DNA of 64,000 bases, from positions 124,001 to 188,000 of IMG/VR virus record IMGVR_UViG_3300044568_003163; one strand, written 5' to 3'. The notes beneath the pieces were generated by a model. It was given only the letters and a program-made list of their open reading frames with translations, made no database searches and was not told the DNA's origin. Below, in pieces: positions 36,566-38,445 of the stretch; position 1 is the first letter of the stretch, and every line of letters starts with the position of its first letter. The translations under genes were made by a program, and so were the position numbers.

Positions 36566-38002
36566 TTACTGAATAACACTGTATCTCTCAGTATCAATAG
36601 CTTTAAGCATAATACTCATAGGACTCATAGAATCTCCACTAAGCACTGCTTTAAGAATTGACGGTGAAAATCCACTGATTAAAGCGGTACCATTCTCAGT
36701 TGCTCTAACTGGAACGTTGTCGTGTCGAGAAACTAAGTTCCAAAACACAATCTTTGGCATTGCATAGCCAGAATCAGAGTATTTTCTTTCGATCATACTG
36801 ATAGCATTGTCACTTATACGTGACGCTTGGTTGAATTCCATGTCAGACATAATCAATAGACATGTTGGCATTTGGTCAATCGAAACGTTATGTTTGATTG
36901 CTTGTTCAAGAATCATATCGAAGGTAGCTTCTAGATTCGTTGACATACCCCATTGAGCACGTTCTAATTGTTGCATTCTCGAACGTAAATCTCCTGTTAG
37001 GTACTCTAACTTTGGTCTTTCGCTGAAAGTTACAAATGCATCTTTGAAGGGACCTTCATTTCTTTCAGAAATATAAAGACCTAATGAGATACAAACGTCT
37101 AGTGCAGAAACTGAACCAGAAACAGTTGTAGACATTGAACCAGAAACATCACAGATAGGTAAAACCATTTCTTTAGATCCTTCCATAAAGTTAGGAAGAG
37201 CTTTCCATTGCTCGTTTGATAACGTAGTGTCACCGTAAGACATTGTTTTTGTAACGTCATATGGATATACGGCACCTGCATTAACTTTAGTTTCACCTTT
37301 AACTAGTGACTCTTTGTAAGCCTCGAATGCTTCGGCATCATTTTTACCAAAAGCTTTTGAGTATCTCGCCATTGCAACAGAAGGTATATGAGCATAGTTA
37401 ACATTACCAAAGTCTTTGTTACATAAGTTAGTTTCAATAACGTTAGTTAAAGAAACAATCTTAGTTCTAAATTCTTTAGGTGATAAGCCCATTTTGGTTC
37501 TGATTTTGTTAGCAATAGCCTTTTTATCAGCCGATACTTTACCACCAGTTCGAGGAATCCATTTTGCAAGTAATCCATTACCTTCTTCAAGATTATGAAT
37601 AACTGTAGCAATTGCAGCATCTTCTACCGCAGTTCCGAATGTTACGAATATGTCATCCCATCTACCGAACTCGGCAATCAAATGAATGTTTTCAATAACT
37701 TCGTTAGGATAAACCTCAGAAGCATGACGTAAAAGTACTCGGAAAGCTTCACGTTCTCCTGCTCCACCTCTAACGTCTCTTCCCCAATACATCAATTTTC
37801 TTGTGATTAAAGGATTCTCATTATGTGCAGCTTCAAACTTAGCTATCAAACGTGATTTACCTTCATCGGTTTTCATTTGAGCTCTTACCGCTCCCATCAC
37901 GAAAAATAAATCTACACAAGCATTAAGAGAAGTGGTAGATGTTACCATTCCATTTTCAGTAGTTGTGTTTTTAGTACGCATTGCATCAACAAAAGTTGTC
38001 AT
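36566..38002 (-). CDS. DUF2828-family Ro60/TROVE-like protein with C-terminal vWA domain
   Basis: TENG, RDVRGGAGER, GRWDD, AKWIPR; MIDAS DVSGSM...STN...SDMEF; FWNL. Confidence 0.85.
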   Translation of the reverse strand: MTTFVDAMRTKNTTTENGMVTSTTSLNACVDLFFVMGAVRAQMKTDEGKSRLIAKFEAAHNENPLITRKLMYWGRDVRGGAGEREAFRVLLRHASEVYPNEVIENIHLIAEFGRWDDIFVTFGTAVEDAAIATVIHNLEEGNGLLAKWIPRTGGKVSADKKAIANKIRTKMGLSPKEFRTKIVSLTNVIETNLCNKDFGNVNYAHIPSVAMARYSKAFGKNDAEAFEAYKESLVKGETKVNAGAVYPYDVTKTMSYGDTTLSNEQWKALPNFMEGSKEMVLPICDVSGSMSTTVSGSVSALDVCISLGLYISERNEGPFKDAFVTFSERPKLEYLTGDLRSRMQQLERAQWGMSTNLEATFDMILEQAIKHNVSIDQMPTCLLIMSDMEFNQASRISDNAISMIERKYSDSGYAMPKIVFWNLVSRHDNVPVRATENGTALISGFSPSILKAVLSGDSMSPMSIMLKAIDTERYSVIQ

Positions 38003-38032
38003 AGTTTTTGGTTTTAAATATGTTAAAAAATT

Positions 38033-38094
38033 CAGAGTGATATATCGGTTTCAAATTAAAAGTTTGATGATAAAAGTTGCTGAAATCACTCTTT
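38033..38094 (-). ncRNA. stem-loop RNA 3 (Y-RNA-like candidate, Lys anticodon-arm mimic)
   Basis: AGAGTGAT/ATCACTCT stem, TTCAGCAA, inner TCAAA-CTTTTAA-TTTGA. Confidence 0.65.
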
Positions 38095-38116
38095 GTATTG
38101 TTTAAAAAAAAATTAT

Positions 38117-38169
38117 CAGGGTACGGTTGGTTTTCAATTGCTGAATGTTAATTGCTGAATGTACCCTTT
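38117..38169 (-). ncRNA. stem-loop RNA 2 (Y-RNA-like candidate)
   Basis: AGGGTAC/GTACCCT stem, two ATTCAGCAATT copies. Confidence 0.65.
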
Positions 38170-38183
38170 GTAATTATAATCGA

Positions 38184-38376
38184 CAGATTGGCTGTTTAGA
38201 TTTTGTGAAGCATCTAGAAACTTCCTCAGTAGTTTTGAAGTGGGATTTGATACCACCAGTCGCTTTGTTTTAAAGTGATGACTAAACTCACTTAATCAAC
38301 CGGCTTTTGAATTTCACGATTGATTTCGTTAATGGTTATCTGTAGATAAGTTGTTTGTTTGCTGAACCCAATCTTT
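38184..38376 (-). ncRNA. stem-loop RNA 1 (long Y-RNA-like candidate)
   Basis: AGATTGG/CCAATCT stem, TTCAGCAA, several inner hairpins including T-arm-like GTGG-TATCAAATC-CCAC. Confidence 0.6.
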
Positions 38377-38415
38377 GATATATTGTAAGAACGTATGTCG
38401 TTGTAACTAGAATTA

Positions 38416-38443
38416 TTATATGTGAGCTAATTTATTTAGTTTC
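38416..38443 (-). promoter_or_regulatory. class II promoter GAAACT-N15-CATATAA driving the RNA array and Ro-like gene
   Basis: exact match to the repeated motif. Confidence 0.7.
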
Positions 38444-38445
38444 AA

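What the first reader, a model, noticed from the sequence alone, without database searches (positions are those of the whole stretch)
38050..38068. tRNA-Lys(UUU) anticodon-arm mimic inside one array RNA
Seen: a 5-bp stem UCAAA/UUUGA closing the 7-nt loop CUUUUAA, which is the canonical tRNA-Lys anticodon loop (CU-UUU-AA). Known: tRNA-Lys is the target of PrrC and of the PARIS AriB nuclease. Inference: a decoy or repair-related substrate presented by the Ro-like protein. The AT-rich context allows a chance match.
Basis: partly seen in the sequence, partly recalled or inferred. Interest (0 to 1): 0.7.

Follow-up and report, generated by a model that had tools for sequence, protein, structure and literature searches.

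The report
Anticodon-arm look-alike on a Ro-partner RNA
The hairpin is real: it is the anticodon-arm-like module of a 60-nt small RNA encoded beside a jumbo phage's Ro-like protein, and hundreds of phages carry related RNAs whose "anticodon" differs from phage to phage, so it mimics tRNA in general and not lysine tRNA in particular.

Summary
Observation confirmed, on the minus strand. Window 38051-38067 reads UCAAA-CUUUUAA-UUUGA. In the 294-kb genome, the only other 5-bp hairpins with this loop are the two real tRNA-Lys genes.

The hairpin lies in a 60-nt unit (38033-38092). This is the last of three units upstream of a 478-aa DUF2828/DUF7788 protein whose predicted fold matches Ro60.

Each unit has a 7-bp terminal stem, a U(U/A)CAGCAA motif beside the 5' strand, a variable insert, and a 3' ...CUG. 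In 206 related phage loci I found 326 such units on the gene's strand and 2 on the other.

At the same place, homologous short units carry covarying 4-5-bp stems with canonical anticodon loops. C32, U33, A37 and A38 are kept; the triplet varies (UGU, UCU, GCA, UUU, GUU, GAU and others). Sibling units carry T arms or whole cloverleaves, and the gene often sits in a phage tRNA array.

So it is a tRNA-derived partner RNA of the Y-RNA kind that displays an anticodon arm. Lysine identity is lineage-specific. A decoy role against anticodon nucleases is plausible but untested.

In passing: the units share the defining grammar of the dictyostelid Class I RNAs.

The parts
38051..38067 (-). Anticodon-arm-like hairpin: stem UCAAA/UUUGA (5 Watson-Crick pairs, A31-U39-type closing pair) and 7-nt loop CUUUUAA (C32 U33 UUU A37 A38)
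   Evidence: Sequence. One of only 3 such hairpins in the genome; the other two are tRNA-Lys genes. Homologous position in 19 aligned units: stem 96.5% paired, and all 5 pairs show changes on both sides.
38033..38092 (-). Unit C, a 60-nt small RNA: closing stem, U, UUCAGCAA, linker, inner helix UAUC/GAUA, anticodon-like arm, A-rich linker, closing stem, G. It is followed by AAUUUUUU, and the Ro-like gene's ATG lies 30 nt further on.
   Evidence: Grammar scan. My covariance model R1 scores it 56.1 bits, E 2.7e-10. Metatranscriptome contigs cover it.
38086..38092 (-). 5' strand of the 7-bp terminal stem of unit C (AGAGUGA)
   Evidence: Pairs with 38034-38040. In alignment A3 this stem is 100% paired and 4 of its 7 pairs covary. 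Its first, second and fifth pairs (A-U, G-C, U-A) do not vary among the 19 units; in the wider set the first nucleotide is A in 195 of 254 units.
38077..38084 (-). Conserved motif UUCAGCAA, one nucleotide 3' of the 5' stem strand
   Evidence: Among 254 unique units, UUCAGCAA occurs 83 times and UACAGCAA 82 times. The C, G, C and A at positions 6, 8, 9 and 10 of the 11-mer are invariant or nearly so. Part of this conservation is imposed by the search grammar.
38034..38040 (-). 3' strand of the terminal stem (UCACUCU), followed by the conserved G at 38033
   Evidence: Units end in CUG in 202 of 254 cases.
38043..38072 (-). Inner helix UAUC (38069-38072) / GAUA (38043-38046) that carries the anticodon-like arm, with a 1-nt bulge on the 5' side and a 4-nt bulge on the 3' side
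   Evidence: Sequence. The equivalent short helices differ in sequence but still pair in homologs: GC/GC, UAC/GUA, GCA/UGC, CUA/UAG. In the MAFFT alignment the register varies, and only 62% of cells pair.
38117..38167 (-). Unit B, 51 nt: stem AGGGUAC/GUACCCU, two copies of UUCAGCAA 14 nt apart, no anticodon-like loop, followed by a run of nine U
   Evidence: R1 scores it 35.4 bits. Its best Rfam family is RF01414 Dicty_Class_I_RNA at 24.7 bits, E 0.033, below the gathering score.
38184..38374 (-). Unit A, 191 nt: same terminal stem (AGAUUGG/CCAAUCU), same motif and same 3' G, with a long structured insert
   Evidence: A long unit heads the array in relatives as well; alignment A6 shows conserved hairpins.
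36566..38002 (-). Ro-like protein, 478 aa: helical-repeat N-terminal part plus a vWA domain with the MIDAS-type motif D285-x-S287-x-S289
   Evidence: Pfam DUF7788 (4.9e-53) and DUF2828 (2.4e-26). phrog_850 'RNA-binding protein', 1.2e-141. AlphaFold2 model with pLDDT 81. Foldseek PDB top 13 hits are all Ro60. Invariant D285, S287, S289.
38415..38445 (-). Possible promoter of the array: TTGAAA, 19 nt, TATAAT. Inferred only.
   Evidence: Read from the sequence. RNA-library contigs from two runs stop at 38392/38393, just downstream. The consensus scan did not list it because its spacer limit is 16-18 nt.

Best explanation
The hairpin is the anticodon-arm module of a 60-nt, tRNA-derived small RNA (unit C). 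This RNA belongs to a large and apparently undescribed family of phage RNAs that are the likely Y-RNA-like partners of the DUF2828/phrog_850 Ro-like protein.

Every unit has a constant handle. It consists of a 7-bp terminal stem beginning A-G, the motif U(U/A)CAGCAA directly after the 5' strand, an A-rich 3' linker, and a 3' end ...C-U-G. I infer that the handle is the protein-binding part, by analogy with the conserved stem of Y RNAs.

The handle carries a variable cargo built from tRNA parts. The cargo can be a lone anticodon arm (as here), a T arm, or a whole cloverleaf.

In the anticodon-arm class, selection keeps the stem and the loop frame C32 U33 ... A37 A38 with an A31-U39 closing pair. 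The three 'anticodon' bases change between phages.

The most likely mode of action (inferred) is that the Ro-like particle displays a stable anticodon-arm look-alike to proteins that read tRNA anticodon loops. The most plausible such proteins are host tRNA-cleaving defence nucleases, against which the RNA would act as a competitive inhibitor or bait.

Shown: the hairpin, the unit grammar, its linkage and strand bias, the covariation, the tRNA-type loops, the Ro-like fold, and presence in RNA libraries.
Inferred: protein binding through the handle, processing to a discrete 60-nt RNA, and any decoy activity.
For: 1. The hairpin is real and not a chance match.

2. The unit grammar is real. There are 131 units on the gene strand versus 1 on the other in 124 loci, and 326 versus 2 in 206 loci, giving 254 unique units. 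All 148 matches of covariance model R1 at E<0.01 lie on the gene's strand. The closest relative, L045, has the same three-unit order of long, short, then short with a CUUUUAA loop.

3. Anticodon-like loops are enriched. YU-NNU-AA loops closed by at least 4 bp occur in 14 of 105 unique units. Dinucleotide shuffles give 0.76 on average (maximum 4 in 300 shuffles), and the reverse complement gives 3. These loops sit at a fixed distance of 12-16 nt after the motif.

4. The loop frame is conserved and the triplet varies. Among the 25 short units whose best hairpin has a 7-nt loop, C32 occurs in 15, U33 in 20, A37 in 22 and A38 in 20, while positions 34-36 vary. Background in these inserts is C 0.17, U 0.27, A 0.48.

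5. The stems covary. All 5 pairs of the arm and 4 of 7 pairs of the terminal stem change on both sides, and slid controls collapse to 22-44% paired.

6. The cargo is made of tRNA parts. The commonest 7-nt loops in all units are T-loop types (UUCGAUU 22, UUCGAAU 6, UUCAAUU 4), then AAUGGUA (10), which I read as D-loop-like, and CUUGUAA (9). Rfam's tRNA model hits the inside of three units. This genome holds a 100-nt unit inside its own tRNA array, with the loop CUUGAAA and a T arm. The gene lies in or beside tRNA arrays in relatives, including Felix O1-like phage wV8.

7. The protein has a Ro60 fold.

8. RNA-library contigs cover the array. In one run the array's contig is about 5 times deeper than the gene's contigs, and coverage ends near 38392/3.

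9. There is precedent. Bacterial and phage Ro60 genes sit beside tRNA-like Y RNAs (PMC4201824). YrlA has been proposed as a possible competitive inhibitor of an anticodon nuclease (PMC7790460).
Against: - Canonical anticodon-like loops are a minority: 52 of the 144 loci that have a unit carry one. Many gene-proximal short units have 9-nt or unrelated loops, so the arm is not essential to the family.
- In L045 an extra C.U mismatch could open the loop to 9 nt.
- The units are related by descent, so the shuffle statistics overstate independence. The 19 aligned units were chosen for having the hairpin, which inflates the percentage paired.
- No result shows that the protein binds these RNAs. The complex prediction was not run by the tool.
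- The RNA evidence comes from unstranded assembled contigs of 95-99% related strains.
- A lone arm lacks the D loop that E. coli AriB also contacts.
- No RtcB gene is present, and no RNA-repair gene was seen next to the Ro-like gene; the one RNA ligase found lies beside the distant tRNA array.
Confidence: 0.6

Rival explanations
1. One reading: a decoy or repair substrate aimed specifically at nucleases that cut tRNA-Lys (PrrC, PARIS AriB).
For: - The loop is exactly that of tRNA-Lys(UUU), and the U36-A-A-U39 element used by AriB is present.
- Loops in relatives include UGU and GUU. Together with UUU these are the three main E. coli AriB targets (PMC12409363).
- The phage also carries two tRNA-Lys genes of its own.
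Against: - The triplet is not conserved: UCU, GCA, GAU, GCU, GUA, CAU, UAU and UGA also occur. The set UUU, UGU, UCU and GUU is connected by single base changes, so the overlap with AriB targets can arise by drift.
- The AriB cleavage site C40|A41 is U40 U41 here, and the D-loop contact is absent.
- The stem is unlike real tRNA-Lys anticodon stems.
- The host and its defence systems are unknown.
Confidence: 0.12
2. An evolutionary leftover. The units descend from tRNA genes, and the anticodon arm survives only as a stable hairpin that spaces or stiffens the RNA. The loop sequence has no function of its own.
For: - Many units lack a canonical loop or have 9-nt loops.
- Cargo is highly variable, and long units are not tRNA-like.
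- The triplet drifts freely.
Against: - C32, U33, A37, A38 and the A31-U39 pair are kept in phages whose Ro-like proteins are as little as about 35-45% identical to this one, while the linkers around them diverge.
- Identical arms (UUCAA-CUUGUAA-UUGAA) persist in units whose terminal stems differ.
- The arms are not recent copies of co-resident tRNA genes, so they have been maintained as their own lineage.
Confidence: 0.2
3. A cis-acting element of the Ro-like gene's transcript (terminator, attenuator or leader structure) and not a separate RNA.
For: - Unit C ends 30 nt before the ATG, and units B and C are each followed by a U run.
- One RNA-library contig runs continuously from the array into the gene.
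Against: - In other phages the units lie downstream of the gene (L003, L007 and the L047-L124 group), far from it, or inside tRNA arrays.
- U runs after units are not general.
- The terminator scan found none.
- In one run the array's contig is deeper than the gene's contigs.
Confidence: 0.04
4. A chance hairpin in AT-rich DNA.
For: GC content is 32%. Six other CU-NNN-AA hairpins with 5-bp stems lie outside tRNA genes in this genome.
Against: - About 2e-4 such CUUUUAA hairpins are expected in the array, and about 0.005 for any CU-NNN-AA loop.
- The hairpin is conserved in L045, and its place and form recur with covarying stems in many loci.
Confidence: 0.02

Closest known systems
Bacterial and phage Y RNAs of the YrlA type with Ro60/Rsr (Chen et al. 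2014, PMC4201824; Rfam RF02553)
   Same: - Small RNAs encoded next to a Ro-fold protein, often several in a row and processed from one precursor.
- A constant protein-binding module joined to a tRNA-like module.
- Present in phages.
- An inhibitor role against an anticodon nuclease has been suggested (PMC7790460).
   Different: - The protein belongs to Pfam DUF2828/DUF7788, not TROVE, and has no sequence match to solved Ro60 structures.
- The conserved motif is U(U/A)CAGCAA, whereas YrlA RNAs have GNCGAAN0-1G.
- YrlA mimics the T arm, D arm and acceptor stem and has no anticodon arm. Here the terminal 7-bp stem takes the acceptor stem's place and the anticodon arm is what is displayed.
- No RF02553 match to any unit; the only sub-threshold hits lie on tandem tRNA genes.
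Thermus phage phiLo Ro60 with Yrl1/Yrl2 (PMC12135203; PDB 9KOP, 9L5Y)
   Same: - It is the best structural match of the predicted protein (E 4e-8, TM about 0.6).
- It is a phage Ro-type protein with two small RNAs encoded just upstream of the gene.
   Different: - Only 14-15% sequence identity.
- The phiLo RNAs were recognised by a CGAA motif in a bulged stem, and no tRNA-like part was reported.
Class I RNAs of dictyostelid social amoebae (Rfam RF01414; Kjellin et al. 2021, PMC7919456)
   Same: The grammar is the same:
- Length about 60 nt and GC about 33%.
- A short terminal stem joining the 5' and 3' ends, with compensatory changes.
- Start (A)AG and end CUG(U), with the G-C pair.
- A conserved motif directly after the 5' strand. 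The Rfam consensus is CCUUACAGCAA; phage units have UACAGCAA 82 times, UUCAGCAA 83 times and the exact 11-mer 12 times.
- The rest of the RNA is variable.

RF01414 is the best Rfam family for three units, at 24.7-28.6 bits.
   Different: - All scores are below the gathering score of 41.5, and unit C itself gives no hit.
- The stem is 7 bp, not 6.
- Motif position 3 is U in only 35% of units.
- Class I RNAs have a eukaryotic promoter element (DUSE), were reported as unique to Dictyostelia, and their known direct binder is the RRM protein Rnp1A.
- I could not test whether dictyostelids have a DUF2828 protein.
Phage-encoded tRNA variants that defeat tRNA-cleaving defences (T5 tRNA-Lys, -Thr and -Asn against PARIS AriB; PMC11464382, PMC12409363)
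   Same: - A phage RNA that carries the anticodon loop of a targeted tRNA.
- It is encoded with or next to the phage's tRNA array.
- The loop types UUU, UGU and GUU recur.
   Different: The T5 RNAs are complete, functional tRNAs that replace the cleaved host tRNAs. Unit C has no D arm, T arm or aminoacyl acceptor end and cannot decode. ARAGORN finds no tRNA in the window, and Rfam's tRNA model gives no match at its gathering score.

Membership tests
Ro60 / TROVE protein family | Ring of helical (HEAT-like) repeats followed by a vWA domain, over the full length | tested here: met
   AlphaFold2 model with pLDDT 81. Foldseek PDB ranks 1-13 are all Ro60 structures, about 500 aligned columns, E 4e-8 to 7e-5, TM 0.37-0.59 by the model (0.50 or more in 11 of the 13). 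The top Swiss-Prot hits are Ro60 of frog, Deinococcus, worm, mouse and human, then Tetrahymena p80.
Ro60 / TROVE protein family | Match to the Pfam TROVE domain (PF05731), or sequence similarity to known Ro60 proteins | tested here: not met
   Pfam gives only DUF7788 and DUF2828 at E<=0.01. phmmer against PDB sequences finds no Ro60 at E<=10. Structural identity is 10-15%. One Atlas cluster of DUF2828 proteins has 16% of members with a TROVE hit.
Ro60 / TROVE protein family | MIDAS-type DxSxS motif in the vWA domain | tested here: met
   D285, S287 and S289 are invariant in 25 aligned homologs; the consensus is DVSGSM.
YrlA-type bacterial Y RNA | Encoded next to the Ro-type gene, on its strand | tested here: met
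   326 units on the gene's strand and 2 on the other in 206 loci. In the window the three units lie 30-372 nt upstream of the ATG.
YrlA-type bacterial Y RNA | GNCGAAN0-1G motif near the 5' end | tested here: not met
   The conserved motif after the 5' strand is UUCAGCAA/UACAGCAA. I read no GNCGAA at that place in units A-C.
YrlA-type bacterial Y RNA | tRNA-like domain made of T and D arms around an acceptor-like stem; match to Rfam RF02553 | tested here: not met
   Unit C has only an anticodon-like arm. There is no Rfam match at gathering score in the window. The RF02553 hits of 27-28 bits in relatives lie on tandem tRNA genes, not on units. Some sibling units do carry T arms or cloverleaves.
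tRNA-Lys(UUU) anticodon stem-loop | 5-bp stem, 7-nt loop C32 U33 U34 U35 U36 A37 A38 | tested here: met
   Sequence. The loop is identical to those of both phage tRNA-Lys genes.
tRNA-Lys(UUU) anticodon stem-loop | Stem sequence shared with a real tRNA-Lys (host or phage) | tested here: not met
   The phage's own tRNA-Lys stems are AUAGA/UCUAU and CCUCA/UGAGG. The nearest of the 12 phage tRNA-Lys arms in the loci differs at 3 positions. Only 1 of 120 sampled genomic occurrences of the 17-mer lies in a tRNA-Lys gene.
Functional tRNA | Cloverleaf with D and T arms and an acceptor end | tested here: not met
   ARAGORN finds no tRNA in the window. Rfam's tRNA model gives no match at its gathering score in the window, and tRNA is not among the matches listed at E<=10 across the array.
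Substrate of PARIS AriB (E. coli rules) | U36-A-A-U39 followed by C40|A41, plus D-loop U16/U17 contact | tested here: not met
   U36AAU39 is present, but positions 40-41 are U U and there is no D arm (rules from PMC12409363). Actual cleavage or binding cannot be tested with these tools.
Dictyostelid Class I RNA (RF01414) | Length 42-65 nt, GC 32-41%, short terminal stem with compensatory changes | tested here: met
   Unit C is 60 nt with GC 0.30. Short units have a median of 59 nt and GC 0.33. The 7-bp stem covaries.
Dictyostelid Class I RNA (RF01414) | 11-nt motif next to the 5' strand with near-invariant U3, C6, C9, A10, A11; start AAG; end CUGU | tested here: met
   Unit C's 11-mer is GAUUUCAGCAA, which has U3, C6, C9, A10 and A11. 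It is preceded by A, giving A-A-G, and it ends CUG followed by A, not U. Family-wide, units end in CUG in 202 of 254 cases, and U follows the unit's last G in 156 of 254.
Dictyostelid Class I RNA (RF01414) | Score at or above Rfam's gathering threshold (41.5 bits); eukaryotic DUSE promoter; dictyostelid genome | tested here: not met
   Best scores are 24.7 bits (unit B), 25.4 (L057) and 28.6 (L307). Unit C gives no hit at E<=10. These are phage genomes.

The most novel reading that the evidence does not exclude
DUF2828 Ro-like proteins and RNAs of the (A)AG-stem-UUACAGCAA ... stem-CUG(U) design form one ancient ribonucleoprotein class that spans phages and eukaryotes. On this reading the dictyostelid Class I RNAs, whose molecular role is unknown, are its eukaryotic members. 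In phages the variable region has been turned into an exchangeable anticodon arm (Lys here; Thr, Arg, Cys, Asn, Ile, Ser, Tyr and Met elsewhere). That arm would titrate or bait whichever tRNA-cleaving defence nuclease the host uses.
Probability: 0.15. Interest if true: 0.9.

Novelty: new variant of a known kind. Interest (0 to 1): 0.74.

Why it matters
Ro60 with a tRNA-like Y RNA is a known kind of particle, but its function in bacteria and phages is still unclear.

Here a second, very large branch appears. At least 7,960 homologous proteins turned up in metagenomes, and the branch includes the Felix O1-like coliphages. It comes with its own RNA family, and the cargo of that RNA is plainly built from tRNA parts. 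In many phages the cargo is a bare anticodon arm with a canonical loop.

That makes one idea directly testable in laboratory phage-host pairs: that Ro-type particles interfere with, or sense, attacks on tRNA anticodon loops. tRNA cleavage is now recognised as a common anti-phage strategy, which adds to the interest.

Separately, the units share their grammar with dictyostelid Class I RNAs, which were reported as unique to those amoebae. This suggests a candidate protein partner and an evolutionary origin for that RNA class.

Tried and rejected
- Rfam at gathering thresholds: nothing in the window. The only weak hit that means anything is RF01414.
- ARAGORN on the window: no tRNA.
- Folding the whole 443-nt spacer: z-score -0.07, uninformative because the signal lies in modular units.
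- Looking for the exact 17-mer as a real tRNA-Lys arm in 185,579 species genomes: 120 sampled hits, 1 in a tRNA-Lys gene.
- Comparing unit arms with the anticodon arms of 582 phage tRNAs: no copies.
- Protein-RNA complex prediction: the tool did not fold it, so it is no evidence either way.
- RtcB in this genome: absent. One RNA ligase (Pfam RNA_ligase family) is present, but next to the distant tRNA array.
- Promoter and terminator consensus scan: nothing above shuffles.
- G.U versus A.C mismatches in terminal stems as a test of the functional strand: too few cases, 2 versus 4.
- Finding a dictyostelid DUF2828 protein: not possible. AlphaFold DB organisms were hidden, Swiss-Prot has none, and the protein database gives no taxa.
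- Gene neighbourhood of a relative: no RNA-repair genes beside the gene, only a gene-free gap of about 1.9 kb after it.
- A MITE-like DNA repeat was considered and rejected. The inverted ends differ between copies while staying complementary, the copies are almost all on one strand, and the loops are strand-specific tRNA loops.
Full report
THE OBSERVATION

The plus strand at window 38050-38068 reads TTCAAATTAAAAGTTTGAT. Its reverse complement is A-UCAAA-CUUUUAA-UUUGA-A, so the hairpin exists on the minus strand. This is the strand of every long ORF nearby. The stem-loop proper is 38051-38067.

The window is part of a 294-kb IMG/VR jumbo-phage record with 32% GC. The phage encodes 35 tRNAs outside the window, including two tRNA-Lys(UUU). 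Both have the loop CUUUUAA, but their stems are different: AUAGA/UCUAU and CCUCA/UGAGG.

Across the whole genome and both strands, CTTTTAA occurs 132 times. It is closed by five Watson-Crick pairs only three times: in the two tRNA-Lys genes and here. A chance match in the 440-nt spacer is therefore improbable. About 2e-4 is expected for this loop and about 0.005 for any CU-NNN-AA loop.

WHAT SURROUNDS IT

The spacer 38003-38445 lies upstream, on the minus strand, of a 478-aa ORF (36566-38002).

Family assignments of this protein:
- Pfam assigns it to DUF7788 and DUF2828.
- PHROGs assigns it to phrog_850, 'RNA-binding protein'.
- It has no sequence match to solved structures.

Its predicted structure:
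- An AlphaFold2 model built on 25 homologs has pLDDT 81.
- The model's 13 best PDB matches are all Ro60/TROVE proteins over the full length: Thermus phage phiLo, Xenopus, Deinococcus and human.
- The best Swiss-Prot matches are Ro60 orthologs, followed by Tetrahymena p80.
- The vWA part keeps an invariant DxSxS motif.

The label 'Ro-like' is therefore supported by fold, not by sequence family.

The spacer holds three units with one grammar:
- a 7-bp terminal stem that begins A-G;
- one nucleotide;
- UUCAGCAA;
- a variable insert;
- an A-rich stretch;
- the 3' strand of the stem, ending C-U;
- then G.

The units are:
- unit A, 38184-38374 (191 nt);
- unit B, 38117-38167 (51 nt, with the motif twice);
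- unit C, 38033-38092 (60 nt).

The hairpin is the centre of unit C. It is carried on a 4-bp inner helix, UAUC/GAUA.

RELATED LOCI

Protein-guided searches of IMG/VR gave 206 loci. More than 576 exist there, and at least 7,960 homologous proteins are in the metagenome protein collection.

A strict version of the grammar finds 326 units on the gene's strand and 2 on the opposite strand, 254 of them unique. A covariance model built from 19 short units finds 148 matches at E<0.01, all on the gene's strand. In the window it finds only units C and B.

The closest relative is L045, with 71% protein identity. It has the same long-short-short array, and its last unit carries UCAAA-C-CUUUUAA-U-UUUGA.

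In many loci the gene lies inside or beside a phage tRNA array, including Felix O1-like coliphage wV8. This phage's own tRNA array also contains a 100-nt unit, at C1:64514-64613. It has an arm ACGAAA-CUUGAAA-UUUUGU and a T arm.

IS THE ANTICODON-LIKE ARM A FEATURE OF THE FAMILY?

Yes, for a sizeable minority.

Enrichment. Loops of the form YU-NNU-AA closed by at least 4 bp occur in 14 of the first 105 unique units. Dinucleotide shuffles give 0.76 on average (maximum 4 in 300), and the reverse complement gives 3.

Range of triplets. In the larger set the arm sits 12-16 nt after the motif in short units. The loops seen are:
- CUUGUAA, 14
- CUUCUAA, 4
- CUGCAAA, 4
- CUUUUAA, 3
- CUGUUAA, 2
- CUGAUAA, 2
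- UUUGUAA, 2
- single cases of CUCAUAA, CUGCUAA, CUGUAAA, CUUAUAA and CUUGAAA
.

Covariation. The stems differ while staying paired: UCAAA/UUUGA, UUCAA/UUGAA, UUUGA/UCAAA, UGGA/UCCA, CAAC/GUUG, UUAGA/UCUAA, UCAGA/UCUGA, CUUUA/UAAAG and others. On alignment A3 all five arm pairs and four of the seven terminal-stem pairs show changes on both sides. Sliding the partners drops pairing from 93% to 22-44%. The caveat is that these 19 units were picked for having the hairpin.

Loop frame. I then took short units without regard to loop sequence. The commonest loop length of the best hairpin is 7 nt. Within those 25 loops, C32 occurs in 15, U33 in 20, A37 in 22 and A38 in 20, while positions 34-36 vary.

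Other tRNA parts. The commonest 7-nt loops over all units are T-loop types (UUCGAUU, UUCGAAU, UUCAAUU), then AAUGGUA, which I read as D-loop-like, and CUUGUAA. Some units enclose complete cloverleaves that Rfam's tRNA model recognises.

Limits. Only 52 of the 144 loci that have a unit carry an anticodon-like one, and many gene-proximal short units have 9-nt or unrelated loops.

The arms are not copies of the anticodon arms of tRNA genes in the same contigs. The exact 17-mer is also not a common bacterial tRNA-Lys arm: 1 of 120 sampled hits.

EXPRESSION

Lake-water metatranscriptome assemblies of 95-99% related strains contain the gene and the array.
- One contig spans 36606-38392.
- In another run the array's contig (38049-38393) has word depth 18, against 3.5-3.9 for the gene's contigs.
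- In a third run the figures are 8 against 2-3.6.
- Coverage ends at 38392/3 in two runs and is about 0-2 over the next ORF upstream.

A TTGAAA-19 nt-TATAAT pair lies at 38445-38415.

These are unstranded contigs, so they show presence in RNA libraries. They do not show discrete processed RNAs.

INTERPRETATION

The architecture parallels Ro60 with its Y RNAs. In that system a constant stem binds the protein, and in bacteria a second module mimics tRNA (PMC4201824). Phage examples are known (PMC12135203; PMC7824862).

Here the protein family, the motif and the mimicked part all differ. The terminal stem has the length of an acceptor stem, and the anticodon arm is what is displayed. In YrlA, by contrast, the T arm, D arm and acceptor stem are mimicked and the anticodon arm is missing.

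The loop frame is conserved while the triplet is free. This points to recognition by something that reads anticodon loops in general, or to a triplet tuned phage by phage. It does not point to a lysine-specific role.

The overlap of UUU, UGU and GUU with the E. coli PARIS AriB targets (PMC12409363) is suggestive. However, those triplets are single-mutation neighbours, other triplets occur, and unit C lacks C40-A41 and the D-loop contact.

A competitive-inhibitor role has a precedent as a proposal for YrlA (PMC7790460). I rank it as the most likely function, but it is an inference only.

A SIDE FINDING THAT MAY MATTER MORE

Rfam's best family for unit B is Dicty_Class_I_RNA (RF01414): 24.7 bits, E 0.033, whole model aligned. 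The same family is the best for L307:389-443 (28.6 bits) and L057:1535-1592 (25.4 bits, E 0.004). All are below the gathering score of 41.5, and unit C itself gives no hit.

The published definition of Class I RNAs (PMC7919456) is:
- about 60 nt, with GC 32-41%;
- a 6-bp terminal stem with compensatory changes;
- a start AAG and an end CUGU, with the G-C pair;
- an 11-nt motif directly after the 5' strand (the Rfam consensus printed reads CCUUACAGCAA; the paper names U3, C6, C9, A10 and A11 as nearly invariant);
- the rest variable.

This is the grammar of the phage units:
- the 8-mer UACAGCAA occurs in 82 of 254 unique units, UUCAGCAA in 83, and the exact 11-mer in 12;
- the 3' end is CUG in 202, and U follows the final G in 156 of 254;
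- the first base is A in 195;
- short units have a median of 59 nt and GC 0.33.

Part of this is imposed by my search grammar: the G at position 2, the C next to last in the 3' strand, the G after the stem, and a motif within one mismatch. The length, the GC content, the first A and the trailing U are not imposed.

Class I RNAs were reported as unique to Dictyostelia and have no known molecular function. DUF2828 proteins occur in eukaryotes, viruses and bacteria. I could not test whether dictyostelids have one.

VERDICT

It is wrong in its specificity for lysine, and the decoy mechanism is untested.

Noticed in passing
window 38117-38167 (unit B); also L057:1535-1592 and L307:389-443: The units share the defining grammar of the dictyostelid Class I RNAs (RF01414): a terminal stem, (CC)UUACAGCAA directly after the 5' strand, about 60 nt, and an end of CUG(U). 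RF01414 is the best Rfam family for three units at 25-29 bits, below the gathering score. Class I RNAs were reported as unique to Dictyostelia.
   Followed up: partly
own genome outside the window: G000:C1:64514-64613 (minus strand), inside the tRNA array at C1:63.5-71.3 kb: A fourth unit (100 nt) with an exact UUCAGCAA motif sits between tRNA-Thr and tRNA-Gln. It carries the arm ACGAAA-CUUGAAA-UUUUGU (a Ser-UGA-type loop), a T arm and a GAAA hairpin. Just upstream of it (C1:64614-64640) lies what looks like the 3' half of a tRNA that ARAGORN did not call. A further UUCAGCAA next to a T arm lies near C1:68941.
   Followed up: partly
window 38145-38166 (minus strand): Unit B contains two copies of AUUCAGCAAUU, 14 nt apart, as if the motif had been duplicated inside the unit.
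   Followed up: no
L125 (Escherichia phage wV8, NC_012749, about 25.9-27.0 kb): In this Felix O1-like coliphage the Ro-like gene (annotated 'RNA-binding protein') is followed directly by the tRNA array. Four units lie interleaved with the tRNA genes, and two 'tRNA-OTHER' pseudo-tRNAs are annotated there. This is a culturable model for the family.
   Followed up: partly
L014:1343-1417 and 2398-2469; L033:1484-1558; L013:2670-2733: These phage loci encode suppressor-type tRNAs. Anticodon CUA is called 'Pyl'. A UCA cloverleaf (called 'SeC' in L014) sits nested inside a unit in L014, and a related nested cloverleaf in L013 is hit by Rfam's tRNA model. This hints at stop-codon reassignment in these phages.
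   Followed up: no
window 38184-38374 and alignment A6 (L016, L251, L255, L286 and others): The roughly 200-nt unit that heads the array is a conserved class of its own in the L017-like clade. It has several conserved hairpins (for example GGAGG-ACCACCGCAAGGUGU, CUGGAAAGACAG, GGUUUAAGAACC), and none of them is tRNA-like. The copies in this phage and in L045 are much more diverged.
   Followed up: partly
own genome outside the window: G000:C1:72186-72884 (minus strand): An RNA ligase (Pfam RNA_ligase, PF09414, E 1.7e-8) is encoded right next to the tRNA array. No RtcB gene is present in the genome.
   Followed up: no
L329:9398-11277 (relative of the gene on a 215-kb contig): A gene-free gap of about 1.9 kb follows the Ro-like gene. 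It probably holds units and tRNA genes, as in L003. An HNH endonuclease gene lies 1.6 kb upstream of the Ro-like gene.
   Followed up: no
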